Of a stretch of DNA of 64,000 nt, positions 1,247-50,600 are shown one piece after another. The notes under the pieces are model-generated. The model was not told the DNA's origin and ran no database searches. It saw only the letters and a program-made list of their open reading frames with translations. Source of the DNA: Zygnema circumcarinatum SAG 698-1b (Eukaryota > Plantae > Zygnematophyceae); contig CM074811.1 in NCBI GenBank assembly GCA_037447605.1, forward strand, positions 2,604,001-2,668,000, read 5' to 3'. A program made the position numbers and the translations under genes. The stretch's first letter is position 1; every line of letters begins with the position of its first letter.

Positions 1247-1341
1247 ACTTTGCGCATGTAATATTGCACATGCGGTGATGGACCTCCCCCGTGTCCAAGC
1301 GTCCTTGAATCACCGCAGGTGCAATATTACATGCGCAAAGT
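1247..1341. repeat. Hairpin: 33-bp inverted repeat (1 mismatch) with 29-nt loop
   Basis: 1247-1279 ACTTTGCGCATGTAATATTGCACATGCGGTGAT is the reverse complement of 1309-1341 apart from one base. Confidence 0.9.
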
Positions 1342-1541
1342 TCAACCAAGTCAGCAAAACTTCAAGAAGTTGAATTTAGTGGGACCACGATTACGCGGCC
1401 TGTGTTTAAAATAACGAATTTGCCCCCCCCTGTGCCAATTAGGGGCCGAGTGGCCATCATCTGAGTCATCTTCAGACATCGTCTTTGGGTGGGAAGGCCA
1501 TCATACCCATCATGAGGAGGGGGGGGGGGGGGGGGGGGGGG

Positions 1542-1551
1542 NNNNNNNNNN
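1542..1551. other. Assembly gap (N run) flanked by poly-G; similar gaps at ~12098-12107 and ~16799-16807
   Basis: N characters between G homopolymers. Confidence 0.95.
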
Positions 1552-1582
1552 GGGGGGGGGGGGGGCTGGGCGGCCCAATTGG

Positions 1583-4500: not shown

Positions 4501-7500
4501 TCAACGGTCCCCCCTCGCCTTACTCTCAGCAGGCAGAGCACTACCACCATCACTATGGCGAGGGCAACAATGACCCCCGAAGCGACCACCCCTGCAACAA
4601 GTCCTGGACTAGTAGTGAACAGTCCACCGCTGGGAGGAGGAGAGGGAGGGGGGCTCCCTCCTTCAGGTCCGGCGAAAGGAGGTGAGGGAGCTGATTGTGG
4701 AATGGGAGAAGAGAAGGGGTCGGGAGGGGGAGGGAACTGTTCACAGGTTGGGAGGCCGTACACTCCATAATATGTGCATAGACCTTGATTCGCAGATAAG
4801 CTGTTCAGAGAGACGAAGTTACAATTGGTAAGGGGACAGGGAAAGTCATCAAAATAGACCCACAAACGTGGGATGAGCTGGTTTGTGCACATTAACCGTA
4901 CAAGTTGACTAACATAACTCAGAAAGTTAGGCACGAAACCATGCTGGGGATTTTCACGAAATCTGCTAAAAGGAGGTGTTGCTCATCATTGAGTATCACG
5001 GTCAAACCTCCGTCAAAGCAAGGTTTGATCCTTTACTCACTTGACAGTTTTCGGGGTAAAGTTGGTTTCGTTAAGGGGAAATGCGCCGCTTAGCAAGTTA
5101 CTGGACAAATCTCTGCAGCTCCAAATCAAAGAGAGACTTTATGTGATGATTCAGTTGTGGCTACACCATCTCAGACGCTGACAGGAAGCTACATCAAACA
5201 AAAGGTGAAGGTGAAGTTAAGGTGAAGTTAAGGTGAAGTTAAGGTGAAGTTAAGTAGGACGAAAAGTATGAAGGAACGATTTAACTTCGAATGAAGTCTG
5301 TTTATATCGAGTGCATGTTAAAGTTCCACAGACTTACATGTCTTTAAGACGTAAGAGGTTTTGAAGTGATGAAGGCACCGACCCATTCAGTTCATTGCTC
5401 TGAAGATGCCTGAAAACCCCGACTTCCCCCGTAGGTTTAGCCAAAACAAACTCGTATCTTCATGAGTCAGCCAGGAAAATGGGATACAACAAAAAAATTA
5501 ACAAGTACTTTCTGGCATGTCCAGAATCCATATTTCCCTTCACCGAAAGCATTTGTCATTAGCATTCTGTATGCCTACAGATAACAATGGGAGAGGTTGC
5601 ATTCTGTATATCCGCAACAATCCTGAGCCTCCTCTCATGCAATGGCTTCATTTTCTTACAGTCTTCAGGACCCTACCGTGACCCCTCCAGATGGCCCTGA
5701 TTTTTTCTTTTTTTTCTTTAACATGCAGCAGGTTATCAGTCAGAAAGCTAAAATTTGACTCCGCATTGACTCATGCATCCTTTCAGGGACAAAACTAACT
5801 GAGGTGGAAACCAGTAAAAGGTGATGTAAAAAGGGTAAGGTCACACTCACAGAACTTCAAGAACTTCCAAATCTCCAAGGGAATCCGGAATTGGTCCTTC
5901 AAGTCCGTTGTAGCTTAGATCACTGCCCTCACAGGTAAAACCACAAACTGTGAACAGTGGATCCCATTTGGTACAAGTGATTCCATCAATTTCATCTGCC
6001 CAAGGTCTGAATAGTCTATTGGAGCATAAAAGTGATCTGCTCCATTTTCGGTTTTACTCTGACCCATCAACTGCTCATTGTGCGTTCACAGCAAAACCAT
6101 CAAACTTTCCATCATATCCTCCAGCTTCATTGAACCCGTATGCATTCTAGAGATGTCGTAACATTCCGAGAAGTCAACAGCAGAAGGAATCAGATTTTTG
6201 TTGGGTTGAGAGAAGTGAGAGATTGGCAGCTTACAGGATTTGCAGTGAGCTGATGTTGGCAAGAAACGGTGATATAGTCCCAGTCAATCCTGATGAGCTC
6301 ACATTTCTGCCGCCAACATACATAAACAAAGTAGTCACTAAGAGTGATCGAGAGCATCAATGGATGAAGGAGAAAACCTCCAGAATCCAAATGAGAACGA
6401 CTATCTGGACAGAAACTTTCTCAGCTTTCCCAGAAGAAGAAGAAGAAGAAGAAGAAGAAGAAGAAGAAGCTTACATGGCAGTCACTTTCGTGAGAAACGG
6501 AGTGCTACTTTGGCAAGTGACCCCAAACCATTCAATAGGCGAACATGGGTCCCCAACCCAATCGCTCAGAAGAGAGCCATCGGAAAGAGCATCTCGGAAA
6601 GCCTGCATGGCCAAAACTGCAAAAAGAGCGACCCCTCCACACAACCAAAGAAGGAAATAATGAGCAAATGCACATACCAAGAAATGCAGCTGTTGAAAAG
6701 TTAAATGCACACTCTAGCTAGATGAAGTGGACAGTGCTACTGCTTCAAGTTTTATTCCTCCAATTTGATCCCCCATACCTTCCAGTGGGTCGGTGGGAAT
6801 TGGCCCAGGTTGAACCTTCAGAAGCTCGAACCCATTAACCATTGGCATAAGAAGGGAGTCTGGAAGGGGTCTAAACTCCACATAGAGATCAGCTTGATCT
6901 CGATGAAGGATCGGATAAGTCATCATCACAGATCTGAAGGGGCCATCTGCGATGGAAACTATATCAATGTTGGGTTCCACACTCGCATTGTTGATGTAAA
7001 GGCCAAACATACGGTCATATGCCATGATATTCCGACCGGCTATTTCGGCAAAGTAGAAAAAAGCCTGTCAAGCCAACGAAAGACCACCATTAAGAATCAG
7101 ATTCTTGCTTCCTTACTGTACTTCTGCATCAAAGTGAGAGAAACATTATGGATGTGTACCTTTCCATTACTGTAAGGTTTCAAACGAGTCAACTCACTGC
7201 AACATTAGAATACCTGATAATCGCCATGTTCTAAGTCCAGAAAGATGTATCCTTTAATATCACTTGTGTTTGGAAACAACCGCGCAGACTGTAGCACAAA
7301 TTGTGGTACATAGTTAGGCGAAGTCATGGCTCCGGTGATGTTTTTGGTGGTATTGAGTGGAGGAGGGAGATCTGTCGGAGGGCTAACAAAGTAGTCTGTG
7401 CCGTAACGGATTGTCTGTTGGTCGTCGTTTATATCCGCAAACCATATCCTATCCAAAGGGTCTTCAGGATATCTGCAAGAAACAAAAACTTCTTAACAAA

Positions 7501-27300: not shown

Positions 27301-28474
27301 CCATGGTGTCATTCAATCGTTGGGGTGTCCCAGACAATGAAGGAAGTTGGAGTCCCTATTGACGATGCAGCACGAGCCCTTCTCGTGGAAGCTTTTGGGA
27401 GGGCAGACCGCTGTTCAGAAGCAGTACAGCTGGTATTGGAGGCTGAGAAGGGGAGTATTCGTGCTGGAGTGAACACATACGCAGCACTTATTACTGTCTT
27501 TGGACTCCATGGCTTGTGTAAGCACTTTTTTACTTTTACGTATGTGTTGAAGCGTGAGCAGACTCCGTTGGCATACCCTTGTTTGTGTCCGCTGTTGACT
27601 AGCAAGAGTTAGGGTCAAAGAGTAGTATGATGGACTCGAGGGTGAGTGGCATTAGGGGAAGTTTTGGGCTGCGGTGAAAGAATTGCTTGGAGGTATGGGA
27701 TATGGGCACACGAAAGGACCAGCGTGGCACGAGAGTTGCAGGATTCTTCCATGACGTCGTGACCACATGGCTTGTTTCAAGACTCTGCTGGGTTACTGTT
27801 AAACCTGTAATGCTTTCCTCAGCAAATGGGTTGCTTTTATCGGCACTCTCTTTTTATTTATCTTCTAGGATCAAACTTTCCAAACAAAATATAGTTAAAT
27901 TAGAGAGGGTGTTGAGGGTTTCTGGACTGCAGTGGAAGAAGCTCAGGAGGTCTTCGACGAAATGGTAGCAGCAAAACAACCTCTTGGCAGGAGGGTATAT
28001 GCCGCTTTGTTTTGCGCCTATGCCGCTGCTGGACGTGAGGAGTCTGCCATGGAGCTGTACAGGAAGATGGAAGATGGCGGATGGATGCCCACCAGGAGGC
28101 AGTACACGGAGATGATTGAAGCCCTCCTTGAGGGGGGCTTGAAGGCAGCGGCACAATCTCTGCTTGACACGTGGCGCCAATTGGGTCCTCTGCGAGCCCG
28201 TGAAGTTGAGCGTATGGAGAAGCTGAGGGAACAGCCAACTGTAGGCTTAGGGCCCAGTGGTGGTCTGCATAAAGTGCCAAGAGGGGAAGAAGCCGCAATG
28301 GCAGAGTCGGGCTATGGAGGGAATGACAACCAGGGGAGTACTAGTGGGGAGGATACGGAGGGTGGACGGGAGACTGGCTTGAATCCATATGAAGAGATGG
28401 AGAGTGGGAGAGGGTCGAGACCGGAAGTAGCGGGAGGCGTCTCTCGTGGGGTCTCAACGAGAGTGGAAAGATAG
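24336..28474 (+). CDS. P-class pentatricopeptide repeat protein (At1g01970-like), organelle-targeted, 6 exons
   Basis: Exons 24336-~24658, ~25339-25428, ~25873-26190 (WFEANVRDFATLLDRYGK; DLVAYTIMISAWGRGG), ~26699-26907 (SYTVLIAAYGR; YTALMDAFIKAG), ~27334-27515, ~27932-28474 (VYAALFCAYAAAG; YTEMIEALLEGG). Tandem 35-aa PPR motifs. Confidence 0.88.
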
Positions 28475-29034: not shown

Positions 29035-29690
29035 TGAGATTGCGTGTGCTTTCGAAGTTTCGAGTTCGTGTAAGTGGCACCACCAAGACTAATATCCCGC
29101 ATAGGTCTGCAGACAGCAGACTGAATGAGCCCCAAGGGTTTTGCGAAAAAGGTAGAGCTAGAGGGGAAAGGTAAGCGGGTCATTTTGCCTTGACCACATC
29201 CGGAACAGAAGTCCATTTTTTCACTAGAAAAGGAGTCTAAGCCCAATACTAATCCCTTGCCTAGAGCCTTGAGATTACTCTTAGCAAGATGGCCAAAATA
29301 AAGGTGCCGCCGAGCAAAGGTAAGAGACTAGTCAGCTTTATGAAGGTGAGCATGCCCAAGAGCGGCAGCAAACGTGGTGAGAGAAAACAGTCACCTTTCT
29401 TGCGTCCGTGCCCACCAACGGCCGTTGGAGTAAAAAAGATAACTCCCTTTCGGATAAAAAGAGCTGAAATGCCTAAAGTGAGGATAGCGCCTACAGACAA
29501 CAAATTTTTAGTCATCCCGGAGACTAAACAAACAACATCGATGACGGAGCGCTGGCCGTCAACCAAAGTGGATACCTTGCCAACATGGGTCGCAGTCAAA
29601 GAACGATTATCCCTTAAAAAGATCGTCAAAGGGACAGATAAAGGAGAAATCCGAGAGAACCATTTACGGCAAAAAGCTGAGTGGTGAGAG
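29035..29690 (-). mobile_element. Degenerate Ty1/copia pol fragment (protease end, GAG-pre-integrase, start of integrase)
   Basis: SHH..FCRKWFSRI...GKVS...VCLVSGMTKNLLSVG, then frameshifted HLGHL...LVLGLDSFSSEKMDFCSGCGQGKMTRLPFP...LIQSAVCRPM...SLGGATY, the typical copia pre-integrase/rve order. Truncated at both ends. Confidence 0.85.
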
Positions 29691-30371
29691 GTGTTGATGT
29701 ACACCAAGGGGGTACATCAAGGTGTTGGTACTTAGTTCCTAGCATGAATTCGGTCATGTTTGGTAAAGGACCGAACATGGGGGTGCCCATATCATTAGGG
29801 CACGGTACGACAGGTCTAGGGATGGTCTAGGGTCGTAGGATTGCGGCATTGACTTAGACCGTACCAAAGGGGGTGCGCGGAGTGCGCCTGGACGGATTGG
29901 AGCGCGGCCATACGGAACGGCGCGCGAATTGTACGGACGACGCGAAAGTTTACGGATGCGGAGATTTTGGAAGCGCGAGAGGCGGATTTGCGTGAAGCGA
30001 CAGGATTGGTCGCGACAGTACGCAAATCGCGGCGCATCTCTATGCGTGACGTGACGTTCAACTGTCCGTACGCTTCTGCATCGTCCGTACAATCACGCGC
30101 CATTCGTACGGCCGCGCTCCCGTTCAGGCGCATTCCGCGCACCCCCTTTGGTACGGTCTAAGCCTGAGCCGTAACCTACGACCCTCGACCTTCACTAGAC
30201 CTGCCGTACCGTGCCCTAACGATGCGGGCGCCCCCCATGTTCGGTCCTACACCAAACATGACCATCCATGCATGGACATTGTCCCTATATCAACACATTG
30301 ATGTCCCGGACAACACTCATGCGAGGAACTAAGTAAGTACCAACACTTTGATGTACCCTATACATCAACAC
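29691..30371. mobile_element. Foldback-type non-autonomous element with ~260-300-bp imperfect terminal inverted arms
   Basis: The left arm GTGTTGATGTA...GGTCATGTTTGG...GGACCGAACATGGGG...TTAGGGCACGGTACG...CTTAGACCGTACCAAAGGGGGTGCGCGG is mirrored at ~30065-30371. The right arm has a ~45-bp extra segment. No TSD seen. Confidence 0.8.
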
Positions 30372-30373
30372 GC

Positions 30374-30684
30374 ACGAGTGCCGGAACGAGTGCTCTTTTG
30401 GAGTGGAATCGCTAAGATGATGGTTTACCGGGGACTTGGCGGCGACCACGTGGGATCCCCTTGAAGACTAGCGCTGATGGTTGTTGTTGTCGTGAGGGGA
30501 TCATGGAACTCGCAATCGTAAAAGATAAAAGCCTGCCATCCGACGAGACATTTTCCTTGTCCGATTCATTGAACACGTAATCGCAGTACTACTGCGGACG
30601 AAACGTCGGCCGGCCCGTTTAAAGAACGAGTACATTGATTTGTTCCCGATCCTATTCAAAAAGAGTACTCGTTCCGGCACTCGT
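30374..30684. mobile_element. Small MITE-like element with ~27-bp inverted termini
   Basis: ACGAGTGCCGGAACGAGTGCTCTTTTG (30374-30400) versus the reverse complement of 30657-30684, with 1 mismatch and 1 indel. No TSD. Confidence 0.55.
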
Positions 30685-31106
30685 TCGCCCGCACCGGTGC
30701 GCCGTTCTCCGTCCGCCGTTGACCTCACCCTGTACGGACAGGCACGCGCGCTCGAACGGTGCGATTCGAATCTGGCGACGCCGGCGAGGCGCTCCGCCAA
30801 TCACGGCCTCTGCGACGTGATCGCGGGTGACTTGGCGACTGCCCTCCGCCTGTCGCACAAGCCGATGGCTTGTCGGTGGCTCCTGATTGGTGTGCATCAC
30901 ACTGATTGTCAAACAACGAATAGGATCGCGCCACGTAGAACATTATCCTTCTGGCGGCCACCCTCCGAGGCCGTACGGTGGGCGGCAGTCCGGCAGGTAC
31001 TTAGCGGAACTGCGCTCGGCGGCGTAGCAACGATCCGGATCGCTCTCCGACCTCCCCACCGAGCTCGCCGCCTCCCTCCCTCCCTCCCTCGCGCGCAGCC
31101 ATAGCC

Positions 31107-32625
31107 ATGGCGGTTCCCCCCCTCGCGCGTCTCTGCACTCCCCTCCTCTGCGTCCTCCTGATGTCGCTGACTCCCTTCACGTGTGCGGCTCCCCTTGCTC
31201 CTGAAGAAGGTAAGATTACCCCTTACATTCTACTGTCGCTTAATCAATGATCTCTTTGCTATATATTGGCGCTAGCACTGCTTCAAGGAGATGATGATGG
31301 ATTCGAATGGAAGCATAAATTTCTGCCACTACTTTCTGATCCTCACTCCAGCTGTCGTGTCTTATTGCATGCAGAGAAATTCCTCTTGCAGCTGAAGGCC
31401 TGGGTGGAGGGGACGGCCTGCGATCAGTTGGACGGCGTTACATGTGACAGCGCGGGCCACATCAGTGCCCTGTACGCATTTCTTCTCCGTGTTGGCTGAC
31501 TGTACTGTGCTCAGTGTCTGACCTGCTGCCTTTCCCCTTCTCATGGGTCTCCACACCCTCGCGAACACTCCCAAACCCTCATTTTAATATATAAGTCTGC
31601 CATTTTGATGCAGTTCTCTCCCCAAACATGCCGAGCCGGAGTCGGATTCGTCCACGAGCGCAGCGGAGCTGCCTGGCGTGGCACGGAGAGAGTTGGCGAG
31701 CACTCCCCCGGCAACAGTGGGCCTCAAGGCTCCTTCGACGAACAAGCATTTGCCTTTGCCCAAAAATGTGACCTTTTCCGGCTACATGACTCTTCCCACG
31801 GTCGGTGGATCCGGCCGTCGGTTCATCCGCTACGGCTCCAAGGAGGCCAAGGCCTTAACTCCGAAGTTGTTCAAGAACTGCAACCTGGGTCTACCCGCCG
31901 CATCTGTCATTCCAGGGTTCGAGGACAGCGGCATGAGCTCGGGCGTAGTGAAGCTCGTGATCTTAGACAGCAAAGGCGAATGGTACTCAGAGTGCTCGGG
32001 ATCGCTGATCGCTCCCAGGCTCGTGCTGACAGCTGGCCACTGCCTGTATGACACCGACAAGAATGTGTGGATGGTGGGCGGCTCCTACAACCTGGCAGCG
32101 TACTCAAGATATAACACCCAATCTGACAAAAACTACTCCATGTCCTACTACTCGGAGGTCAGGGTGTTTTCTGCGTTTCAGACGTCCCCTACGTGGGAGA
32201 AGACTCTGTACGCCGGCAGCGACATTGCTTTAGTGAAGCTGCAGACCAGCCTTGCAGGGCAGACGTACTCATGGAGCGGCCCTTCCGCCAACCCACGTGC
32301 CAATTTCGGCTATCCTGCTGAATTTCAGGATGGCTATAAGCTCGATTACGACGTGACCACAGCTGCGCTGACTCGCGGCTGCCAAGGCTTCTCCTCGGCA
32401 ATCATGTGCGAGGACGTCTCTATAGAAGGGGGCATGAGTGGAGGGCCGATATTTAGTCCCTACAACGGTGTGAACGTGGCGGGGACTCTTTCCGGGGGAC
32501 AGTCGGACGACAGTTGCCCTGCTTATTACACTTCTTTGAACGGCACGTACTCTTTGACGACTCTGGTCACCGCCATTGGCTGCAAATATACAGTAAGTGG
32601 AGGTGTGTACAAGGCTTCGTGCTAA
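31107..32625 (+). CDS. Secreted chimeric protein: signal peptide + LRR N-terminal cap + V8/trypsin-like (S1) serine protease, ~403 aa, 3 exons
   Basis: Exon 1 31107-31209 (MAVPPLARLCTPLLCVLLMSLTPFTCAAP). Exon 2 31375-31471 (EKFLLQLKAWVEGTACDQLDGVTCDSAGHISAL). Exon 3 31614-32625 is in frame with the 315-aa ORF. Triad motifs CSGSLIAPRLVLTAGHC (His), SDIALVKL (Asp), GGMSGGP (Ser), plus GYPA. Both introns are GT-AG and phase-compatible. Confidence 0.85.
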
Positions 32626-33736
32626 GCGTTGGCAGGTGGAGGGGGAGCACCTGCGAGAGTTGAAACCTTCGCTTCAAACGCCGCAGGAAGAGCAAGCGGA
32701 TTATGGCTGCTGCCGCTTCTACGGGATAGGGGTAACTTATACTGGCCGTTGTTTGACTAAAGGGTGGTTAGTCGTTTTCCGGGCCGCCAAGATGTGAGAA
32801 TAGTCTCCATCACAAATGTTTCGTACTTAATAAGCAAGGAGCTTTTTGGGAGCAATGGTGATTTTTTTTGTGATTCGCTTGTAGTGAGGGCAGGCGGGGG
32901 AACAATATGTTTTCAATGAATGGACTTGTCGGACAAGCTTTGCACTTGTTCTGTTTTACATGTACTGTTTACAGCAAAAGCTGATCTCGTTTGTGCCATA
33001 TCATACTCTGCCATCTTTGCCCTATCTAGTGACGTGTTCACCAATGTGCCGCTTGCTCCAAGCGCTCCGTCGGCCAAACTGCGTATAACGCGCTCAATTG
33101 TTGAGTTGCGGTTGAGTTGCTCTAGTTGGCGACTGCCACATGAGTGAGTAATCGCTGTCGCGCTGCATTAGAGCGTCATGAGTGTTTGCACCACCTTGGC
33201 AGGTTCTCCACTTCTTAGTGCAATTCACCTTCTTCACTTCGCTCATCGAATCACACGGAACCCGCCAGCATGCAAATAAACATAAAATTACAAGGCATTT
33301 CATCGTATGGAAAAGAATTACGAAAATCATTTTCGTATGCGCATAATTGCGTTGACACAGGACACAATCAAATGTCATGGAAAATGTACAAAAGGCATTG
33401 GCCATAATGCCTTACTATCCCCGTTGCCACGAAGAGGATTAACATGTTCCCATTCTTCACCCTTTTTATTACCCATCGTTGAGAAACTTCAAGATTGTGG
33501 CGCCTGCGTGAGCGGCCGCCATCGAAAGGGATGAATGCGTTTTGCAGCCGATGAATAATGGACCTTGCACATCTCAGTAACTTCTCTTATGAAGAAGTGA
33601 AGAGAGAACGAGATGGCGAAGGTGGCCGAAATCGTGATAAGGGGGGAAGAGAGAAGAGAGTGAGACGGAAGAGCGGAGATTGAGATGTAGCAGAGAGATG
33701 AGAGCGAGAGAAAGAGAGAGAGAGAGAGAGGGAGAG

Positions 33737-33770
<34 letters not shown>

Positions 33771-35259
33771 AGAGCAATGAATCGAAAACCGATGGATAGA
33801 GAAAGTGGCCGGAGAAGAGGTACTTGTTACTTTAATTTAATGTACCTTTAATTTTCGTGATTTCTATAATGAACTCTGCCTCCCAAACAAACCCTTGCCG
33901 TTTGCATGTTAGAATCAACAGCATTGAAATTTATTCACAGAGTCAGCACCAATCTACTTAGCGTTCATGTCCTAGAATTACAACTGTCAATCTCCAACCG
34001 TGAGTCCAACACCAACCTGCTTAACGTTCAATTTTTCGGGTTAGCAGCCTTGACAGGATATCTGTTAGCAGGGAGTGAGCAGCCACCTGCTGCAGCCTCT
34101 CCCAGCGGTGCTCCCAGGCCTCGCTCACGAGCTTCAGGCTGCCCACCGCGTGTGCTTCCCTCCCTCCCCTTCCTCTTGACAAGGCTCGTTCTCGCCTTCC
34201 TTTTAGGGCCGTTGCGAACTAGGCGAGGCTAATGTCACATCCGTCTACGAATGACGACGTGCCACGTGTACCATATTGTATACGTGGCGAGTTGTGATTG
34301 GAGGTATTCGAATCATTCTCTATTAAGAGAAAGGAATGATTTTTTTCGTTTTTTCGCCTCTCCAGTGGCATTCAGTGCCAAGCCTTGCAGTCAAACTCTG
34401 CAGGCGCGACTTTCGACGAATGAGGAGTCGGAGTTTTAGGGTTTTCAAGATATTTAGAGTACTTAGGGTGAGCATATTTAGTCATTAGTTTATGGCAGGA
34501 GGCTTGAGGGGAGGTGCTGATGAGGCGGCCCTTCCCTAGAGAAAGGCCCTCTGTGTGTCTCCGCTTCTCTCCCTCTCTCTCCCACTTGTCTCCTTCTCTC
34601 CTTTCTTTTCCCTGTTTTCTCCTCTCCACTCAGTCTCTCTCGATTCCTCGCTCCCTTCCCATCTCTGTTCCCCCTTCGCGCTCCCAGCTGCCAGCTGTCT
34701 CATTCTCTCCCTCCCCGTCTCCCTCAACCCATTCCCCATTCTGCCTCTCGCTGATCCCTCACTCTCTCTCAGTCGCCTTCAACCCCTTTCTCTTCTCTCC
34801 CTCCACCCTCCCCCACCTCCCCCCTCTCTTTCTCTGGCTCTCCCTCTTTTCTCCCTCTCTTTCTCTCTCCCCATATGGACACTACGAGCGCCCCCGCTCA
34901 GGGATTAGGGTTCCGGGCCCCACCGGAGGGCTCATGGCGAGAGACGTGGTCGCGGCGGCAGGGGGAACTGCAGACCCTTCAGCGTCCATTCGCAGTAATT
35001 CCTGTTGTATACAATAGGGGTTTAGCCTAGAATAGGACACCGTACGGTTCTTAGCCATTGTCGCAGGTCTTTAGGAGATTCGGTCACTGCCGGAACAGAC
35101 AGACATTCCGTCGCAAAGTGAGGACGCGAGACTTCTGAATAGGGCACGTGGAGAGCGGCGATAGGCCGCGCCATCACTGGAATCTGCTTAGAATGAATGT
35201 TGTAGTTGTGTCACGTGGCGCACAGCGATAGGCTGCGCGGTCAGCTTTGTATTGCTTAT

Positions 35260-36145: not shown

Positions 36146-39100
36146 CAGTAGGACCCCGTCATATTTTCCACCTTCAAAAGTGCGTCCCCAAGAAATTCGC
36201 CCCGATTTTGCCGAAACCACCTTTTTGTACGGTAACTAGTGTTAGCCGTACTACTCGTACTGTCCGTACTTTTCGTACTGTCCGTACTATCTGTACTAGC
36301 CGTTACGGGCTTACGCAAAACTCACCTAATCTCCCCGCTCGTGCCGCCGTAAGAGGCGCTCGCTTTTCTCCCCTTCTTCCTGGCTTCGATACGATACGAT
36401 ACGAAACAATCGGTACGACACTATACGATACGATACGAAACGCCCCGATAGGTATTGTCCGTACGAGCCGTACGAGCTGAGACGAACAACAGAAAGCGGA
36501 AAAGGGTAACTCTACTGCACCCCCGCGTTTTGTCTTTCGCACCCCCCTTTTGAAAATTTTGCCTGCCCGTTTTGGTACCCACCAGTTTTGAATATTTCGG
36601 GAAGGCCTGCCTCTGCTTCTCCTGTCCTCCCTGTGCCTTCTTCTCCTTCCTCCCTGTTCTGTCTCGGCCTCCCTCTCAAGCTCAGTTTCTCCTCTTTCCT
36701 TCTTTCCTTCCTTCCTCCTCTCCCTTCCTCTCCCTCCTCCTCCTTCCTACTCCTCCCTCCCTCCCCTCCTCTCCCTCCCTCCCTCCCTCCCTCCCTCCCC
36801 TCCCCTCCCTCCCTTCCCTCCCTCCCTCCCTCCCTCCCCTCCCTACCCTCCCTCCCTCCCTCCCTCCTTTTCTGGACATTCCACCCCCCTCGTTTTCTCC
36901 TTTTCACTATTGACTTCCAACAATGTGCGACAAAAGAAAAGGGGATTTGCATTGGTCTCAAGATGGTGAGGCCATCAAATAAACATGGACAAAGTCAACA
37001 TGGGAACCACAAGAAATTGCAAACCGAGAAGAGGAGAGACGAGGAGGGGAGGGCAAGGGAGGGCAGGGCAGGGGAGGGGGGGAGCGGAAGGGAGCGGGCG
37101 GGAGGGGAGGGCCGAGGAGGACAGGGAGGGGACGGGAGGGGAGCGGGCGGGAGGGAAGGGCTGGGGAGGAAAGGGTAGAGGAGGGGAGCTGAGCGGAGCG
37201 GAGGGGAGGGAGGGAGGGAGGGGAGGGGAGGGAGGGAGGGAGGGAGGGAGGGAGGGAGGGAGGGAGGGAGGGAGGGAGGGAGGGGAGGGGAGGGAGGGGA
37301 GGGGAGGGAGGAGGGAGGGGAGGGAAGGGGAGGGAGGAGGAGGGAGGGAGGGAGGGAGGGAGGGAGGGGAGGAGGAGGGAGGGAGGGAGGGAGGGGAGGG
37401 GAGGGAGGGAGGGAGGGAGCGGAGGGGACGGGACTGGCGGGAAAAAGATTTGTTCCCGAAATATTCAAAACTGGGGGGGTAACCAAAACGGGCAGGAAAA
37501 GTTTTCAAAAGGGGGGTGCGAAAGACAAAACGCGGGGGTGCAGTAGAGTTACCCGCGGAAAATTACGTCTATGCGTCACGATATGTCACGATACGATACG
37601 ATACTAAACGAGACAGTACGATACGGTACGATACCATACGGTACGATACGTACGGTCCAACATTTCCTCTAACATAATACCGCCCGTCTATTCGTAACAC
37701 GAACCTTATATATGAAAAATTAATATTTTCGCCTCATATTGGCCGGAACCAGGGTGGAAAATATGAGGACCCCCTACTGTACCCGTACAAGCTGTACTAG
37801 CCGTCACGGGCTTACGCAAAACTCACCTATTCTCCCCGCACGCGCCGCCGTAAGAGGCGCTCGCTCTTCTCCACTTCTTTTTGGATTCGATACGATACGA
37901 TACGGCCCGATACGGTACTATCCGTACTAGCCGTACGAGCTGTAGTACAGTAGGACCCCATCATATTTTCCACCTCAACATTTGCGTCACCAATAAATTC
38001 GCACCAATTTTGCCGAAACCACTTTTTTGTACGGTAACTTCGTGTTAGCCGTACAATCCGTAAAATTCGTACAATTCATTCTATCCGTACTAGCCGTACT
38101 AGCTGTAGTAGCCGTCACGGGCTTACGCAAAACTCACCAAATCTCCCCGCTCGTGCCGCCGTAAGAGGCGCTCACTCCTCTCCCCTTGTTATTGGCTTCG
38201 ATACGATACGACACGATACGAAACGCCCCGATACGGTACTATCCGTATTAGCCGTACGAGCTGTAGTACAGTGGGGGGTCCTCATATTTTCGCCATGGTA
38301 TTGGCCAAAAAGGGGCGAAAATATTGATTTTGCAAATATAAGGTTCGTGTTACCAATAGGCTTTCGGTAACATGTTAGAGTTCATGTTTGTCCGTACGTA
38401 TCGTATCGTGTAATATCGTATCGTATCGAACCATATCGTCCAATATCTATCGTACCGTTCCGTATCGTATCGTCCAATATCATACCGTATCGTACTATAT
38501 CGTACCATATCGTACCGTATCTATCGTACCGTGTCGTATCGTATCGCATACACGTAGTTTTCCGCTCTTCGCGTTGTTTTTCTCATTGATGATGCTATAA
38601 TTATCAATAGTGGAAGAGCACACCCATGATGAAATAAATGAGTGAGTTAATATTAGGCTGGGGGTTGACGGGCTTCCACGGCAATGAAACAAAACGGGTG
38701 CCTTGTGCGACTTGGACGACGCTCAATACCAAAACACCTCTTCAAGTCAATATGCTTGCCGTTTAGATGGTTGATGTGGATGGTATATGGAGCAGACGAG
38801 GAGAGGAGCGAGCGCCTCTTACGGCGGACACCTGTGGGAAGATTCTACAACTCGTACGGCTAGTACGAATACAGTGGGGGGTCCTCATATTTTCGCCATG
38901 GTATTGGCCAAAAAGGGGCGAAAATATTGATTTTGCAAATATAAGGTTCGTGTTACCAATAGGCGGGCGGTATTATGTTAGAGTTCATGTTTGTCCGTAT
39001 ATATCGTATCGTCTAATACCGTATCGTATCGTTACGTATCGTGTAGTATCGTATCGTATTGTGCCGTATCGAAGCCAAGATGAAGGGGAGAGGAGCGAGC

Positions 39101-41291: not shown

Positions 41292-43748
41292 TCATTGCAC
41301 TTCACTTAAGAAGACCTGTCGAATGAACCGTGCAGCAACCCTCGAAGTCAGCCTCGTTGCCACTTCTGGCACGACCTGCACCGCCACATTGGGCACCAAA
41401 GGGAGCAGCTCCCTCCCCAGCTCTAACGGGCCCCACTCTACTGCTCTCCCCCCTAGTGCATGATTGGAGCCTTCCTGCCCTCTTATCAAAAAGTCGGTGA
41501 CTCTCCGCAGGTTATATAGAACTGCTCGGTCTTCCTCGTTCACAGAGGGCACCAGGAAGTGTTCTGCAGCTGTATTCCCTGTTCTCCGGAGCAAAGTGGT
41601 GATCCCCAAAGCCTCTAGCCTGTCCCTAGTCTGTTCCCGCGCTAAGGCATCCATGCCCTTCACAATCTCGTCCAGAATGAACTCTCGGAAAAACGCCCCT
41701 TCATCAGAGAACAAGAATGCTAGGGCTGCTCGCGCCTGACCTCCCTCACTACTTGGGGCGAACTGGGCCATAGCTGGAACAGTCATTGTTGGGAATGCAG
41801 ATGTGCTTGACGAGGGAAGGGCTCTCACACGGGAGGTAGGTCTCTCAGGTTCACCTTGTCCGGCAGTTGCAGCAGCTGCAAAGGTCTCAAAGGCCTCCAT
41901 AACATCGATAAACCGGTCAGCATCAAAGATGCCTTCTTTTCCGTAAATAGTGTACTTCAAGGCCTGCCTTAACCTGGGGGAAGGATCTGTCAAGAGCCTC
42001 TGTGCTATGTATGGGTATGCAGCATCCACAATTGCGAAATCAGAATTCCCCACCAACGCGATTCCTTCAAGCACACCAATTGCCCGAATGATGAGAGCAA
42101 AGTAAGGCGGAATGCGGAACGGATAATCGAAAGTGATTTGCGCCAAGTCAGCGGCCAACTCCTGGAAATTGATCCCCTTCGCGCCACCACCTTCCAACGC
42201 TTGGTCAAACACCCGTGCAAGGACCGGCATGATGGGAGTGAGGTCAACACCTTCAGGAATGAAATCAAGAAGTACAAAGTCCTCGACAATCGCAGGATAA
42301 TCGCGATGTATAAGGTGTGAAATTGCCTCTATCATGCCGTACTTTTGGTCCTCCGTGATGCGAGTCATCAAGCCAAAGTCGAGCACTGCAAGGCGACCAT
42401 CCGGTGTTCGGATGAGATTACCGGGATGGGGGTCCGCATGGAAGAGACCCGTGTCGAGCAGCTGCTTGAGGTAGCAAATGACTCCCACATTCACTAGAGA
42501 ACCGACATCAGAAGCAGTACTTTGCGAGAGTTTCTCGCCATCTATCCATCCGGAGACAAGCACCCTTCGGGATGTGTATTCGGGGAATGTTTTTGGGACC
42601 ACCACCTGAGGAAGGTCTTTCGCCATTGAAGCCGCAAAAGCAGCAGTGTTGGAAGCTTCGTTTACATAGTCAAGTTCTTCAAAGAAACGAGCTGCCCACT
42701 CGTCAACAAGCCCAACGATATCTGTTGCGATCTGTGGGACCCCGCGAAGAGCCAAACCCAGCCGTCGGATAATGAACAAATCGACGGTCACAGTTTCAAG
42801 CACATATGGTCTCTGCACCTTCACTGCTACAGACTCCCCAGTTGACCGCAACCGGCCTTTGTACACCTGTCCTAATGAAGCAGCAGCGATAGGATCGGGG
42901 GATAGCTCTGAGAAGATTTCAGATGGGGAAACACCAAGCTCTTCTTCCATCAGCTTCATGGCAATACCATTGTCAAAACTTGGCACCTTGTCACACAGTT
43001 TCTGAAGCTCAGTCATTGCGGCAGGGGAGAGAATATCCGGCCGGATACTGAGGGCCTGGCCGAGTTTAATGTAAGCTGGCCCAAGAGACGTGACAATCTC
43101 TCTCAGCTGAATGGCCCGCATCACCTCATTCTCCCTCACTTGCTTTCGAATGAGGTCAGAAGCTACTCCTGTCAGAAAGCCCCCTGCCACCCCTAAGAGC
43201 TGCAAAATTCTCTGTGCAACAGCTGCAGGTCGCTTCGACCAATACGCGGCAATAGTCTCCGGCTTGTATACCAGAGGCAGTTCCTCTCCCTCCCCTCCCG
43301 TCTCTACCTGCACTAACCTCATCTGTACATCATCTGCTGCAAATTGAGAGTCATTTAAATTCTGGCCCCTCAGTCCCCTCATCAGCGATGCCACTTGTAC
43401 ATCCTCCTCCATCTGTGCCCGCATCCGCTTTATCTCAGCTGACATTTCCCCCACTCGCATTCGTCGGCCACCCTTGCTCTCCTCCCCTACATCTAACTTG
43501 ACCCTATCGCTTTCCCCGTATTGCACTCGAGGCCTCTCTGTCACAGCACACCTCCATCGCAAAGCCCTTCCTGCGTGGTTTCCTGCCGATTTGCTAAAAG
43601 CTTTTCCTAGTAGTGGTTTCGTTCCAACTGCTTTTGTGAGCGGCACGCCACCCAGCAGTATCCTGCAGTCTACACGGAAGGAAGCCATGCACTGCGCTTC
43701 CATAACGTCTGCATAACCAAAAGACACTTTCATTTTGTTGTCAGTCAT
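41292..43748 (-). CDS. ABC1K6: ABC1 atypical kinase, plastid ABC1K6 (At3g24190)-like, 818 aa, intronless CDS
   Basis: Single ORF with LREIVTSLGPAYIKLGQALSIRPDIL, AAASLGQVYKG, VAVKVQRP, FFEELDY..E, FHADPHPGN, LDFGL. The subfamily call comes from recalled similarity of the RAQMEED..LMRGLRGQNL N-terminal motif. Confidence 0.9.
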   Translation of the reverse strand: MTDNKMKVSFGYADVMEAQCMASFRVDCRILLGGVPLTKAVGTKPLLGKAFSKSAGNHAGRALRWRCAVTERPRVQYGESDRVKLDVGEESKGGRRMRVGEMSAEIKRMRAQMEEDVQVASLMRGLRGQNLNDSQFAADDVQMRLVQVETGGEGEELPLVYKPETIAAYWSKRPAAVAQRILQLLGVAGGFLTGVASDLIRKQVRENEVMRAIQLREIVTSLGPAYIKLGQALSIRPDILSPAAMTELQKLCDKVPSFDNGIAMKLMEEELGVSPSEIFSELSPDPIAAASLGQVYKGRLRSTGESVAVKVQRPYVLETVTVDLFIIRRLGLALRGVPQIATDIVGLVDEWAARFFEELDYVNEASNTAAFAASMAKDLPQVVVPKTFPEYTSRRVLVSGWIDGEKLSQSTASDVGSLVNVGVICYLKQLLDTGLFHADPHPGNLIRTPDGRLAVLDFGLMTRITEDQKYGMIEAISHLIHRDYPAIVEDFVLLDFIPEGVDLTPIMPVLARVFDQALEGGGAKGINFQELAADLAQITFDYPFRIPPYFALIIRAIGVLEGIALVGNSDFAIVDAAYPYIAQRLLTDPSPRLRQALKYTIYGKEGIFDADRFIDVMEAFETFAAAATAGQGEPERPTSRVRALPSSSTSAFPTMTVPAMAQFAPSSEGGQARAALAFLFSDEGAFFREFILDEIVKGMDALAREQTRDRLEALGITTLLRRTGNTAAEHFLVPSVNEEDRAVLYNLRRVTDFLIRGQEGSNHALGGRAVEWGPLELGRELLPLVPNVAVQVVPEVATRLTSRVAARFIRQVFLSEVQ

Positions 43749-47632: not shown

Positions 47633-50600
47633 TCAGTTCGGGGCCGGGGCGCTCAGCTCAAACTCATTGGCAGAGCGGCCGTACAAGTTGTCTGCTCACA
47701 CCCGCGCATGGCTCCGCGTGAGTCCTGCATCCCCCGCATGCATGTCAGCCATGTACAAGGCCGACGACTTTCTTCTAAACAGGGGTGTGCACAAAAACAG
47801 GCCATTCTAGACGGGTGTGCACACAATCCGACGTTTCTAGAAAGGAGTATGCACACATCGCGACATTCTAAACAGCTGTACACACAATGCGTCATTCTCA
47901 ACGGGGAGTGCAACAATGCAGTATCCTAATAGGCGTGTGCACTAAAAAGTAAGAAGTCTGGGACTCACAAGGGCTTGTAGAGCCCTGCAGCTTATCAGCG
48001 CCGGCGGCAAGTGGGTTCCGTCTCCTCTGCCTTTGTCGTCGCACAAAGAAAGCGACTGCTCCGAGAACAGCTAGCAGCACTACCACGCCAATAATGACTC
48101 CCACTATCATCCCAATGCCGCCTCCACTGCCACCTCCTGTGCTGGTAGGAGGGGCGAGGGCTGGTAGGGGCACTCCATAGGGTGGAACATTGGCGCAGTC
48201 AAGCAGTCCTTGACCTCCACAAAGGTACGGGTTGCCAGAGTAGCTGCAGAGGGGGCAGTTAAGGGTTTCATCAGTTGAGCAGTGAAAAAAAAGGTGAGGG
48301 TGATGCAGGGTGTTGGAAGGGTGAAGTGCTTACTTCAATGACAAGGAGGATGGAGCTTGGACTAAGTCTGCAGGGAGCTGTCCTTGGAGATTATTGTTGG
48401 CGAGGTTTCTGCATCCAGCAGAAAGGAAAATTAGTCATTATACAGCAAGGACTGAAGAGCGTTTGAAAAAGCAGGTTTTCAAGCAACTTGATTGCAGGAG
48501 CAGCAACAGACAGGTTAGAAAGACTCACAAGTATGTAAGTGCCGGTAGAGAGCCGGTGCCAAGGTCATCTGGGAGGGTTCCGTTAAATTTGTTGTTGGAC
48601 AGATCGCTGCGCATCAAACAGATGAGAATAAGGAAAGCCTTTTAGATAGATATAGAAGTTTGATAAACATTGGCTTGCAGCAGAAACGCAAGCACTGGAG
48701 AAGAAAACAATAGGGGATATGCGCTTACAGATAGACCAGGTTATCCAGATCTGTGATCGTATTTGGGATGTTTCCAGTCAAAGTGTTGCCACTCAGGTCC
48801 CTGCAATGACAGGCAAACAGAAAGGCTTAGAATAGTTTGCACTTACATTATACATCAGGAACACTAAACAATTATAATAATCAACAATATCATTTCTGAT
48901 GTTCGAAGTATGTGAGGAAAAATGACTTACAATGATTTCAGATCAACAAGATATGAAATGTCAGGGTAGATGTAACCGTCCAGTTCAGAGTTCGGAAGCT
49001 GACTGCAGCATCACAAGAAGAAAACGTTAGAAATAGTGGAAAAGTACCCCGTAAACCAAATAGGAAGGAAAAGTAAGAAGGGGAGTGCAGCAATGTGGGG
49101 CAAAGCGCGGTCTCACATGGCAGATATCCTGCTTGTATCATCTTTCACTACACATGTCACGCCCCTCCATGCGACAGGTGCACATGGATCCCCCTGCCAG
49201 CCAATGAACTCCTTTACTCCCAAGCTCTCCTTCAGCTTATACATTGCCGTTTCTGCAAACAAGAAACAACCAGCAAAAATAGTGAGAAAACTTCCAAGTT
49301 CTACAATTAAAGCAACATTTCCGCTTAAACTGAGGGGAAAGGCATAAAGACTGTACTGACTTTGTGATAGTTCCGTCCTGTTGGCCTTCGGAAAGACTCC
49401 ATAGATTTCAACGCCGGTCAAAAGAGGTCCGAGCTTTGTCGTTGGAGAGCCGAGCTCAATTGTCAAGGAGTCAATGGCAGGTACATACTTCGTGTAGAGA
49501 GCGAGAACAGTGGAATAGCCGGCAATCGCATACACGTCCACAGTAGTATAGTTGGCTGAACCGGTAGTACTGTACATAGTTACTTCTTCTCCATTCATCT
49601 TCACAGTGAAGGTGCGATCGCCAGCCTTTACAACTGCAGCAACGAGGAGTCCCCACTTAGACGATGCAACCAGATACAGTTGAAACCCTAGCAGAAGAGT
49701 TCACGTGAAGATGGAGATTGCATAGTAAGAAGCGTACCATTGTTTGACTCTATAAAGAGAAGGTAGACGAGGACAGGCGTGTCCTTAAAGACAGTGAAAT
49801 TGTATAGAATGCGCCCCTTTGGAGTGGCTACAAGTTCATCTTGGAAGAGAGCTTTGGGCCAGAAGTAGGGTGCCTGGTCTATTCCAACTATATTCGTCAA
49901 GTTTGTCTCGTGAAGCGTAAGGCATGAAGGCGAGCAGCTGCCACAAAGAAAAGTCTGTTAAAAGGCAGCGAAGGTGCGAGGAGACGAACCAAAGAAACAA
50001 CCAAAATGCGATTACACGGAAAGAAGAAAGGAGAGCCGCTTACTCGATGAGATAGACATTGTTGATTTCATCACTGTACCACTGTCGCAGGCCCTTCTCT
50101 GTGTCATCGGTAAGCAAGTCACCAAAAGCCGTGCCTCCAGAGTTGATTCGATATAGGAGGTACAAAAGGGAAGATGAAGGAACATCTCCCGAAGTAGCGA
50201 TGTAAGCTGACTCATTAACCTGCAGGAAAAAAAAAAATTTAGCGCACGAAGGTCGCTCAGCCGATCCTCCATTGTAGGAAGCAAGCTTTGATAGATACAG
50301 CAGACTCGGCGAGCAACAGTGCCTAAAATCACACCTGAAGGACTTCCACTGAGTTGATCAGGGTCGCACTGCTTCCTTCATCTCCGATCACACAGAAATC
50401 GGCATATAAATCTTCGATGGACACCATTGCACTCTTGAAGGTGCCCGAACCAGTGGGCGAAAACCTCTCCAGAGCAACTCCTTCAATAGCAAGAGTCATG
50501 ACTGGCGGCTGCACCACAAACGCCCCAAAACATTGCAGACCACGTTATAAGCCCCCCTTGCATTACGATGGGAGGTATCGACAAACGAGAACAGAAGCAT

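What the first reader, a model, noticed from the sequence alone, without database searches (positions are those of the whole stretch)
31107..32625. Exon-shuffled secreted protein: receptor LRR N-cap fused to a serine protease in place of the LRR array
Seen: exon 2 encodes W-x4-C-x4-GVTC-x4-HISAL and ends in a phase-2 intron at ...ISA(L). The cap exons of both receptor genes in this window end at the same place (...GVTC...KVTA(I)| and ...GVTC...RISA(M/I)|, both phase 2), but there the next exon is an LRR. Here the next exon is a Ser/Ala/Pro-rich linker plus an S1 protease with an intact His/Asp/Ser triad. Established: this disulfide cap (LRRNT_2) normally only caps plant LRR ectodomains, and I know of no described LRRNT-protease architecture. 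Inference: the 5' end of an LRR receptor gene supplied promoter, signal peptide and cap to a protease module, creating a new apoplastic enzyme.
Basis: partly seen in the sequence, partly recalled or inferred. Interest (0 to 1): 0.85.

Follow-up and report, generated by a model that had tools for sequence, protein, structure and literature searches.

The report
Secreted protease carrying a receptor-cap remnant
A real three-exon algal gene encodes a probably secreted chymotrypsin-fold serine protease whose N-terminus carries a shortened, conserved copy of the cysteine "cap" that normally starts plant leucine-rich-repeat receptors; this is an apparently undescribed domain combination, already seen once elsewhere in this genome, and its function is unknown.

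Summary
Exons 31107-31209, 31375-31471 and 31614-32625 splice into an open 403-codon frame. It reads signal peptide, 33-residue Cys-pair module, Ser/Ala/Pro linker, then an S1 protease with His/Asp/Ser intact (Pfam Trypsin E 1.8e-14; fold Z 24.5 to Bacillus glutamyl endopeptidase).

One run's contig skips 31472-31613 (GT..AG), joining cap exon to protease exon. Junction 1 has no read support. Both junctions are bridged by a continuous transcript ORF of the only cap-bearing relative found (P0001, 41% identity).

The cap identity is indirect:
- Pfam LRRNT_2 does not score it, though it scores both receptor caps in the window.
- The motif is about 300 times rarer than chance, and the exon has the same phase 1 to phase 2 structure as the receptor cap exons.
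- P0001's N-terminus, searched against all PDB sequences, returns only plant LRR-receptor caps as its nine best hits.
- The cap is as conserved as the catalytic domain (46% vs 44%).

The fusion is old and forms a small family. This scan already reported a tandem pair on another piece of this genome (s1-337030). A bacterial origin of the protease is not supported: the nearest relatives are cap-less algal and virus-like proteins. Function is inferred only.

The parts
31107..31209 (+). Exon 1: start codon and signal-peptide-like N-terminus (hydrophobic core about residues 9-21), ending in phase 1 at ...PEE(E)
   Evidence: The donor is AG|GTAAGA. The PEEE motif across the junction is continuous in the P0001 transcript ORF.
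31210..31374 (+). Intron 1 (165 nt, GT..AG, phase 1)
   Evidence: Reading through hits an in-frame stop at 31248-31250. There is no read support for the joint. One low-depth unspliced contig covers 31191-31353.
31375..31471 (+). Exon 2 (97 nt, phase 1 to phase 2): shortened LRR-cap-like module, helix-like KFLLQLKAW followed by C50-x7-C58 (GVTC) and GHISA(L)
   Evidence: There is no Pfam LRRNT_2 hit.
31472..31613 (+). Intron 2 (142 nt, GT..AG, phase 2)
   Evidence: Skipped in one contig of run X4, joint 31471->31614.
31614..31698 (+). Exon 3, first about 28 codons: Ser/Ala/Pro-rich linker. It is not part of the protease module shared with cap-less relatives
   Evidence: Identity to P0001 over residues 68-108, the broader stretch that one search took as the linker, is 29%. 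pLDDT is about 50.
31699..31866 (+). Family-specific N-terminal extension (exon-3 residues about 29-84), propeptide-like. It includes a conserved strand P-A-T-V-G-L-K predicted with pLDDT 94
   Evidence: The alignment with cap-less P0002/P0003 starts here, right after their signal peptides. AF2 result. The structural alignment to mature V8/GluBI begins at residue 85-86.
31867..32622 (+). S1 (chymotrypsin-fold) catalytic domain. Triad codons are His 32038-32040, Asp 32221-32223 and Ser 32437-32439 (motif GGMSGGP)
   Evidence: Pfam Trypsin E 1.8e-14 and Trypsin_2 E 4.5e-7. AF2 pLDDT 85-98. VIA-align Z 24.5 to 1p3c and 22.4-22.7 to Esp/V8.
32623..32899 (+). Stop codon TAA and 3' UTR covered by transcript contigs
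   Evidence: An X3 contig covers 32586-32899 with no differences. High-depth X2/X4 contigs cover 32617-32823 with 9 differences.
6475..6616 (-). Comparator: cap exon (142 nt, phase 1 to 2) of a malectin-like LRR receptor kinase gene, followed by a 72-nt LRR exon
   Evidence: LRRNT_2 at 30.1 bits. Sequence. Kinase exon at 3203-3610.
49117..49252 (-). Comparator: cap exon (136 nt, phase 1 to 2) of the malectin-like receptor-like gene, followed by a 72-nt LRR exon
   Evidence: LRRNT_2 at 19.6 bits, E 0.0011. Sequence. Malectin_like hit at 50499-51062.

Best explanation
This is an expressed three-exon gene for a secreted, disulfide-rich serine protease of the chymotrypsin fold. Its nearest solved structures are the glutamyl endopeptidases GluBI, V8 and Esp.

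The protease module is a roughly 55-residue N-terminal extension plus the catalytic domain, all in one intron-less 1-kb exon. It belongs to a small family also found, without a cap, in other algae and on virus-like contigs.

In the lineage of this alga, the module acquired three things upstream: a signal-peptide exon, a phase 1-2 exon that descends from the N-terminal cap exon of an LRR protein, and a flexible Ser/Ala/Pro linker. The repeats themselves are gone. The fusion is old and has been kept: the cap is as conserved as the catalytic domain.

Inferred mechanism: the protein is secreted as a pro-form. As in V8-type enzymes, a cut near the start of the catalytic domain would activate it. 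In that case the cap, linker and extension together form a long pro- or targeting region, for latency, folding or docking in the wall or apoplast. They would not form a ligand-binding LRR domain.

Shown here: the architecture, junction 2, the fold and triad, and the conservation. Inferred: secretion, the cap disulfide, activation by pro-region removal, and the role of the cap.
For: Gene model:
- The spliced frame is open, with canonical splice sites.
- Joint 31471->31614 appears in a run contig.
- Both junctions are bridged by continuous homologous sequence in the transcript-derived P0001 ORF.

Protease:
- Pfam Trypsin at 54.6 bits.
- Invariant H/D/S in the family alignments.
- AF2 mean pLDDT 84.5 and pTM 0.85.
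- Z 24.5 at rmsd 2.1 Å over 206 of 215 residues of 1p3c, and Z 22.4-22.7 to Esp/V8. Foldseek gave the same fold for P0001.

Cap:
- Motif enrichment and a phase-2 donor.
- The same 1-2 exon phases as the receptor cap exons.
- hhalign of the two fusion caps against the two receptor caps gives P 0.013 in the correct register.
- The cap profile hits the FLS2 cap at E 0.04.
- P0001 residues 34-100 return plant LRR-receptor ectodomains as all nine best PDB hits, aligned on the cap.
- Cap identity is 46%, against 44% for the protease and 29% for the linker.

Secretion:
- The N-terminus is hydrophobic.
- The mature protein has 10 cysteines (an even number).
- There are 3 NxS/T sites.

Family:
- The window protein and P0001 are sisters (SH-aLRT 90) inside a clade of cap-less proteins. 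These include one from Tribonema gayanum and one on a contig with D5 primase-helicase and RNA polymerase genes.
Against: - Pfam LRRNT_2 gives no hit for the window's cap or for P0001's N-terminus.
- The window's exon 2 alone finds nothing in PDB sequences.
- Every individual cap E-value is marginal (0.01-0.7).
- AF2 models the P0001 cap at pLDDT below 50-60, so the fold of the cap is not shown.
- Junction 1 has no read support, and low-depth unspliced contigs exist.
- The contig showing junction 2 is very deep (5150). Neighbouring deep contigs differ from the window by 3-4%, so it may come from a near-identical paralogue or allele rather than this exact copy.
- The runs are labelled only 'RNA?' or '?'.
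- No signal-peptide predictor was available.
- Activation by pro-region removal is argued only by analogy with V8-type enzymes. The residue before the catalytic Ser is Met, not Asp, so trypsin-type activation is not expected.
Confidence: 0.75

Rival explanations
1. The Cys-pair module is not derived from an LRR cap. It is an unrelated or convergent small disulfide motif, or simply the N-terminal part of this protease family's own propeptide in this lineage.
For: There is no Pfam LRRNT_2 hit even at E 10. Exon 2 alone finds nothing in PDB sequences. The module lacks the long loop between the helix and the Trp, and in the window copy it lacks the second Trp. AF2 confidence is low.
Against: The motif, the spacing to [VI][ST]A and the phase-2 donor are shared with two bona fide cap exons in the same window. 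The exon phases (1 to 2) are the same. P0001's version keeps the second Trp and GHVxSLD, and it retrieves only plant LRR-receptor caps from 177,635 PDB sequences. Cap-less relatives have no such motif.
Confidence: 0.17
2. The ancestor was a full LRR-domain-protease fusion, like the LRR-papain proteins that this scan's unchecked first-reader notes report elsewhere in this genome, and the repeats decayed. This would replace a single clean exon shuffle that placed a cap exon directly before a protease exon.
For: P0001 keeps an LRR-like first strand and L-G after the cap, aligned to TMK1's first repeat. Exon 3 begins ...(L)SLP, like the LRR exon of the malectin receptor (IQLP). About 28 codons of non-protease sequence sit at the start of exon 3. 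Earlier notes list LRR-protease mosaics in this genome (unchecked).
Against: Pfam detects no LRR in either protein. The resemblance at the start of exon 3 is only 3-4 residues. No intermediate with several repeats was found.
Confidence: 0.35
4. The model is an artefact. Exons 1-2 are a dead remnant of a receptor gene, and the protease is translated on its own or the locus is a pseudogene.
For: Junction 1 is not seen in reads. Unspliced low-depth contigs cover intron 1 and the intron 2/exon 3 border.
Against: The protease frame has no ATG before residue 58 of exon 3, which lies inside the conserved extension, and it has no signal peptide of its own. Joint 2 is observed. P0001 has the same order in one continuous ORF. 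All frames are intact, and the cap is conserved at 46%.
Confidence: 0.05

Closest known systems
Glutamyl endopeptidase I group of peptidase family S1 (S1B: Bacillus intermedius GluBI 1p3c, Staphylococcus V8 1qy6/1wcz, Esp 4jcn)
   Same: Two-barrel chymotrypsin fold with His/Asp/Ser in the same order. These are the best structural matches (Z 24.5 and 22.4-22.7, rmsd 2.1-2.7 Å over about 205 residues). All are secreted with an N-terminal pro-region.
   Different: Sequence identity is only 17-18%, and the sequence matches to PDB are weak (E 9e-4). There are five presumed disulfides. A family-specific extension of about 55 residues is present. The motif is GGMSGGP rather than GNSGSP (the latter recalled from memory). 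Substrate specificity is unknown. No NCBIfam model matches.
Cap-less algal and virus-like relatives of the same protease family (P0002 from Tribonema gayanum, P0003-P0007, P0013, P0151)
   Same: They share the N-terminal extension (conserved P-A-I/T strand, GY..P motif, conserved Cys) and the catalytic domain at 29-37% identity, and they form one clade.
   Different: Their signal peptide is followed directly by the conserved extension. They have no Cys-pair cap and no Ser/Ala/Pro linker.
LRRNT_2 (PF08263), the N-terminal cap of plant LRR ectodomains (for example FLS2, HAESA, TMK1, and the two malectin-like receptors in this window)
   Same: An amphipathic helix, then W-x-G-x-x-C-x(n)-G-V-T-C-D-x-x-G-H-[IV]-x-x-L. 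There are two cysteines. It is encoded by a phase 1-2 exon that follows an exon ending in phase 1.
   Different: It is about 15 residues shorter. It falls below Pfam detection. No LRR follows it, so it has no repeat core to cap. The second Trp is lost in the window copy.
Tandem pair of LRR-cap/trypsin-like protease genes on another piece of this genome (scan note s1-337030)
   Different: I did not see those sequences. The relation to P0001 and to the 3-4% divergent deep transcript contigs is unresolved.

Membership tests
Peptidase S1 (Pfam Trypsin PF00089, chymotrypsin fold) | Profile score above the curated cut-off | tested here: met
   54.6 bits against a cut-off of 20.6. Trypsin_2 scores 31.1 against 27.6.
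Peptidase S1 (Pfam Trypsin PF00089, chymotrypsin fold) | Catalytic His, Asp and Ser in that order, in the motifs TAxHC, D[IL]A and GxSGGP | tested here: met
   LTAGHC, SDIAL and GGMSGGP are present. The three residues are invariant in 52 aligned relatives.
Peptidase S1 (Pfam Trypsin PF00089, chymotrypsin fold) | Double beta-barrel fold | tested here: met
   The AF2 model has pLDDT 85-98 over the domain. All 1000 S1-protease chains that were aligned scored Z of 8 or more, with a best of 24.5.
Peptidase S1 (Pfam Trypsin PF00089, chymotrypsin fold) | Proteolytic activity | not testable with these tools
   Needs an enzyme assay, with a Ser342Ala control (full-length numbering).
Subfamily S1B, glutamyl endopeptidase I type | Closest structural and sequence kinship to V8/GluBI, and Glu specificity that depends on the processed N-terminus | tested here: inconclusive
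   The best Z values are to GluBI, Esp and V8, but elastase and thrombin (S1A) follow at Z 22. Sequence E-values are weak for both groups. Specificity residues were not analysed.
LRRNT_2 (PF08263) | Profile score above the curated cut-off (20.7 bits) | tested here: not met
   No hit at E up to 10 for exon 2, for exon 2 with upstream context, or for P0001's N-terminus. The positive controls in the same window score 30.1 and 19.6 bits.
LRRNT_2 (PF08263) | Cys pair within W...C...(W)-G-V-x-C, preceded by a helix | tested here: met
   KFLLQLKAW, then C50 and C58 in GVTC. The register is confirmed by hhalign and by the FLS2, TMK and HAESA alignments of the family profile and of P0001.
LRRNT_2 (PF08263) | Caps the first repeat of an LRR solenoid | tested here: not met
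   The next exon is a linker plus protease, and Pfam finds no LRR. P0001 has only a vestigial LRR-like strand.
LRRNT_2 (PF08263) | Cap fold (helix plus disulfide-stapled hairpin) | tested here: inconclusive
   AF2 models P0001 residues 30-58 at pLDDT below 50 and residues 59-90 at 55-66. The alignment has no depth in this region.
Plant LRR receptor kinase or receptor-like protein | LRR array, transmembrane helix, with or without a kinase | tested here: not met
   The ORF ends at 32625 after the protease. No LRR or kinase was found.

The most novel reading that the evidence does not exclude
The orphan LRR cap may be an autonomous, selected module rather than a relic. Tethered by a flexible linker, it could dock the protease, or keep it latent, on LRR-type partners or wall components. 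That would make this small algal family an extracellular protease coupled to recognition machinery, built from receptor parts in the closest algal relatives of land plants.
Probability: 0.12. Interest if true: 0.8.

Novelty: new variant of a known kind. Interest (0 to 1): 0.5.

Why it matters
Land plants, as far as I know, keep only Deg/HtrA-type S1 proteases. A secreted V8-like S1 protease family in a streptophyte alga is therefore already unusual.

A receptor-cap exon grafted onto such an enzyme gives a dated, intron-phase-consistent example of how the exon-per-module structure of LRR genes allowed parts to be reused. Because Pfam does not score the cap, this architecture is invisible to domain catalogues.

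If the cap has a role of its own, it would be the first case of an LRR N-cap working without repeats. If it does not, it is a neat molecular fossil. Either way, the gene adds to the apparent pattern in this genome of proteases joined to recognition modules.

Tried and rejected
- Word-index homologue searches found no further cap-bearing member. The queries were exon 3, a 7-sequence profile, and P0001. The last two were limited to 8000 candidates by common protease words, so absence is weak evidence.
- Pfam and NCBIfam gave nothing for the cap. NCBIfam also gave nothing for the protease.
- The window's exon 2 against PDB sequences gave no hit.
- AF2 of full-length P0001 did not give a confident cap. 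I therefore could not check disulfide partners or where the conserved N-terminal strand docks.
- The Atlas feature search gave only generic trypsin-like clusters at scores of 0.88 or less.
- I tried to identify the organism through an exact-protein look-up of the ABC1 kinase ORF and through the run accession of P0001 in papers. Both failed. The label 'zygnematophyte' comes only from earlier scan notes.
- BLAST of the 5' region and of the protein against the window found no second copy and no donor-like DNA, only CCCT low-complexity matches.
- The spliced 403-residue protein could not be handed to the fold or family tools, because it has no single reference. I did not type it in. P0001 and the separate exons were used instead.
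Full report
**1. What is in the sequence**

On the plus strand, an ATG at 31107 opens a 103-nt exon that ends AG|GTAAGA at 31209 (phase 1). A 97-nt exon follows (31375-31471, after ...TGCAG) and ends CT|GTACGC (phase 2). A 1012-nt exon (31614-32625, after ...GATGCAG) runs to TAA. The joined CDS is 1212 nt, 403 codons, with no stop.

Reading through either intron meets a stop or leaves the frame. The protease frame has no ATG before residue 58 of exon 3. The protease can therefore only receive a signal peptide through the two upstream exons.

The N-terminus has a basic residue followed by a hydrophobic core at residues 9-21. The mature protein would have 10 cysteines and three NxS/T sites. This fits a secreted protein, although no signal-peptide predictor was available.

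**2. Transcript evidence**

Seven public runs of the same organism label hold 39-52% of the sampled words of 31000-32900, roughly the exonic share. I laid four of them on 29800-34200.
- One contig of X4 skips exactly 31472-31613 (GT..AG; depth 5150; 30 letters on the shorter side).
- Contigs identical to the window cover 31914-32899 at low depth.
- Much deeper contigs over 31642-31866 and 32617-32823 differ by 3-4%. A near-identical paralogue or allele is therefore expressed far more strongly, and it may be the source of the joint-bearing contig.
- Junction 1 was not observed, and low-depth unspliced pieces exist.
- The runs are labelled only 'RNA?' or '?'.

Independent support for both junctions comes from P0001. 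It is a 431-residue ORF on a 1479-nt Logan contig, taken here as a transcript (SRR8128906, L001). Its continuous sequence aligns across junction 1 (PLAPEEE|KFLL against PIVPEEE-VVLL) and across junction 2 (GHISA|L|S against GHVLSLD).

**3. The protease**

Exon 3 scores Pfam Trypsin at 54.6 bits (E 1.8e-14) and Trypsin_2 at 31.1 bits. His142, Asp203 and Ser275 (exon-3 numbering) sit in LTAGHC, SDIAL and GGMSGGP, and they are invariant in 52 aligned relatives.

AlphaFold2 with that alignment gives mean pLDDT 84.5 and pTM 0.85. The best structural neighbours are:
- Bacillus intermedius glutamyl endopeptidase: Z 24.5, rmsd 2.1 Å, 206 of 215 residues.
- Staphylococcal Esp and V8: Z 22.4-22.7.
- Elastase and thrombin: about Z 22 (Foldseek on the P0001 model agrees).

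The alignment to the mature bacterial enzymes starts at exon-3 residue 85-86. Residues 29-84 are therefore a family-specific N-terminal extension. One strand in it (P-A-T-V-G-L-K) is predicted at pLDDT 94. In the cap-less relatives P0002 and P0003 it is conserved right after their signal peptides. Only the first 28 or so codons of exon 3 are a true Ser/Ala/Pro-rich linker.

**4. Relatives and origin of the protease module**

An exhaustive HMMER search of 1.84 billion representatives found 190 proteins at E of 1e-3 or better, but only 9 at 1e-10 or better.

The best hit, P0001 (41% identity, E 7e-51), has the same cap. The next hits (P0002-P0007, P0013, P0151; 29-37% identity) have none.
- P0002 is a Tribonema gayanum (xanthophyte) transcript in EukProt.
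- P0004 lies on a 42.6-kb metagenome contig between genes with D5_N/DUF5906 and RNA-polymerase Rpb1 domains, so it looks like a giant virus.
- P0006 lies on a gene-dense contig of 35% GC.

In a quick maximum-likelihood tree, the window protein and P0001 are sisters (SH-aLRT 90) inside a clade of these cap-less proteins (support 92). No NCBIfam bacterial family matches.

The note that the module 'looks bacterial' (s1-353308) is therefore not supported as a recent bacterial transfer. The single intron-less exon does still fit retro- or horizontal acquisition from some source.

**5. Is exon 2 an LRR cap?**

Against:
- Pfam LRRNT_2 gives no hit for exon 2, for exon 2 with upstream context, or for P0001's N-terminus. 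It scores the two receptor cap exons of this window at 30.1 and 19.6 bits.
- Exon 2 alone finds nothing among PDB sequences.
- AF2 models P0001's cap poorly.

For:
- (a) The pattern W..C..G[VIL][ST]C..[VI][ST]A is expected 0.003 times per 64 kb in six frames. It occurs three times, in the two receptors and this gene, each time followed by a phase-2 GT.
- (b) All three exons are phase 1 to phase 2 exons (97, 136 and 142 nt) that follow a phase-1 donor.
- (c) The window cap aligns without gaps to P0001's (11 of 24 identical). P0001 keeps the second Trp and GHVLSLD.
- (d) A profile-profile comparison of the two fusion caps with the two receptor caps finds the right register at P 0.013.
- (e) The two-sequence cap profile hits the FLS2 N-cap (NWTGITCDSTGHVVS) at E 0.04 among 177,635 PDB sequences.
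- (f) P0001 residues 34-100 return plant LRR-receptor ectodomains as all nine best hits (TMK3, TMK1, HAESA, FLS2, BRL3 and one unnamed kinase). Every printed alignment lies on a cap motif, and the TMK1 alignment extends into the first repeat.

Each E-value is marginal on its own, but together the evidence is coherent. I put the LRR-cap descent at about 0.75-0.8. I do not file the module as an LRRNT_2 member by Pfam's criterion.

The cap is as conserved between the two proteins (46%) as the catalytic domain (44%), and more than the linker (29%). That argues for selection on it.

**6. How the fusion arose**

It needs four corrections.
- Both receptors in the window are malectin-like receptors in which the cap exon is internal. 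They share no DNA similarity with this gene. They are comparators, not donors.
- The fusion is ancient (41% identity to the other cap-bearing member) and has been duplicated.
- Exon 3 starts in phase 2, as an LRR exon does, with ...(L)SLP.
- P0001 keeps an LRR-like strand after the cap.

The join therefore probably lay inside or after a first repeat. Alternatively, an LRR array decayed. I cannot separate these two possibilities.

**7. Likely working**

The shown parts support a secreted, disulfide-rich S1 endopeptidase.

By analogy with V8, Esp and GluBI, where removal of the pro-region frees the N-terminus needed for activity, I infer that the cap, the linker and the 55-residue extension form a long pro- or targeting region. 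The analogy rests on my own knowledge of those enzymes and on the titles of the pro-peptide-locked Esp entries. The residue before the catalytic Ser is Met rather than Asp, so trypsin-type N-terminal insertion is unlikely.

The conservation of the cap suggests a role such as folding, latency or docking. Nothing here tests that.

**8. Novelty**

Full-text searches for LRRNT_2 with trypsin, for Zygnematophyceae with serine protease and LRR, and for LRRNT with peptidase S1 architectures found no description. Because Pfam does not score the cap, domain catalogues would not list the architecture.

It is a new variant (new architecture) of a known protease kind, not a new kind of system. Within this scan it is a repeat observation in the same genome.

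Noticed in passing
window 31642-31866 and 32617-32823 (runs X1, X2, X4): Very deep transcript contigs (depth about 180 to 5900) differ from the window by 3-4%, while identical contigs are at depth 4-22. A near-identical paralogue, allele or strain variant of this gene seems to be very highly expressed.
   Followed up: partly
L002:6001-7266 (ENA metagenome contig, 42.6 kb): A cap-less relative of the protease (P0004, E 1.7e-27) sits between genes with D5_N/DUF5906 primase-helicase and RNA polymerase Rpb1 domains. This contig looks like a giant virus, which could be a vehicle for spreading the protease family among algae.
   Followed up: partly
window 6475-7040 (-) and 3203-3610 (-): The first 'receptor' is also a malectin-like LRR receptor: malectin-like sequence lies directly upstream of its cap exon, and a kinase exon lies downstream. 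In both receptors of the window the cap is therefore internal, each LRR is a 72-nt phase 2-2 exon, and the cap exons are phase 1-2.
   Followed up: partly
window 29264-29707 (-): An ORF with a retrotransposon Pol polyprotein beta-barrel domain (Pol_BBD, E 5e-10) lies about 1.4 kb upstream of the protease gene. A transposon fragment therefore borders the locus.
   Followed up: no
window 41295-43748 (-): An 818-codon uninterrupted ORF encodes an ABC1 atypical kinase (E 9e-63). This is a long single exon, unusual in an otherwise intron-rich window.
   Followed up: no
window 27932-28471 (+): An ORF with pentatricopeptide (PPR) repeats.
   Followed up: no
window 31059-31095, 36750-37430, 33697-33778: A CCCT/CT-rich leader lies just before the start codon, and similar CCCT-type low-complexity arrays occur at 36.7-37.4 kb. 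A GA-rich simple repeat at 33.70-33.78 kb was skipped by the reads tool. Unrelated deep contigs attach to the leader through this repeat (loose ends at 31059 and 31090).
   Followed up: no
window 30371-30411 and 30647-30687: A 41-nt inverted repeat (85% identity) lies 400-700 nt upstream of the start codon.
   Followed up: no
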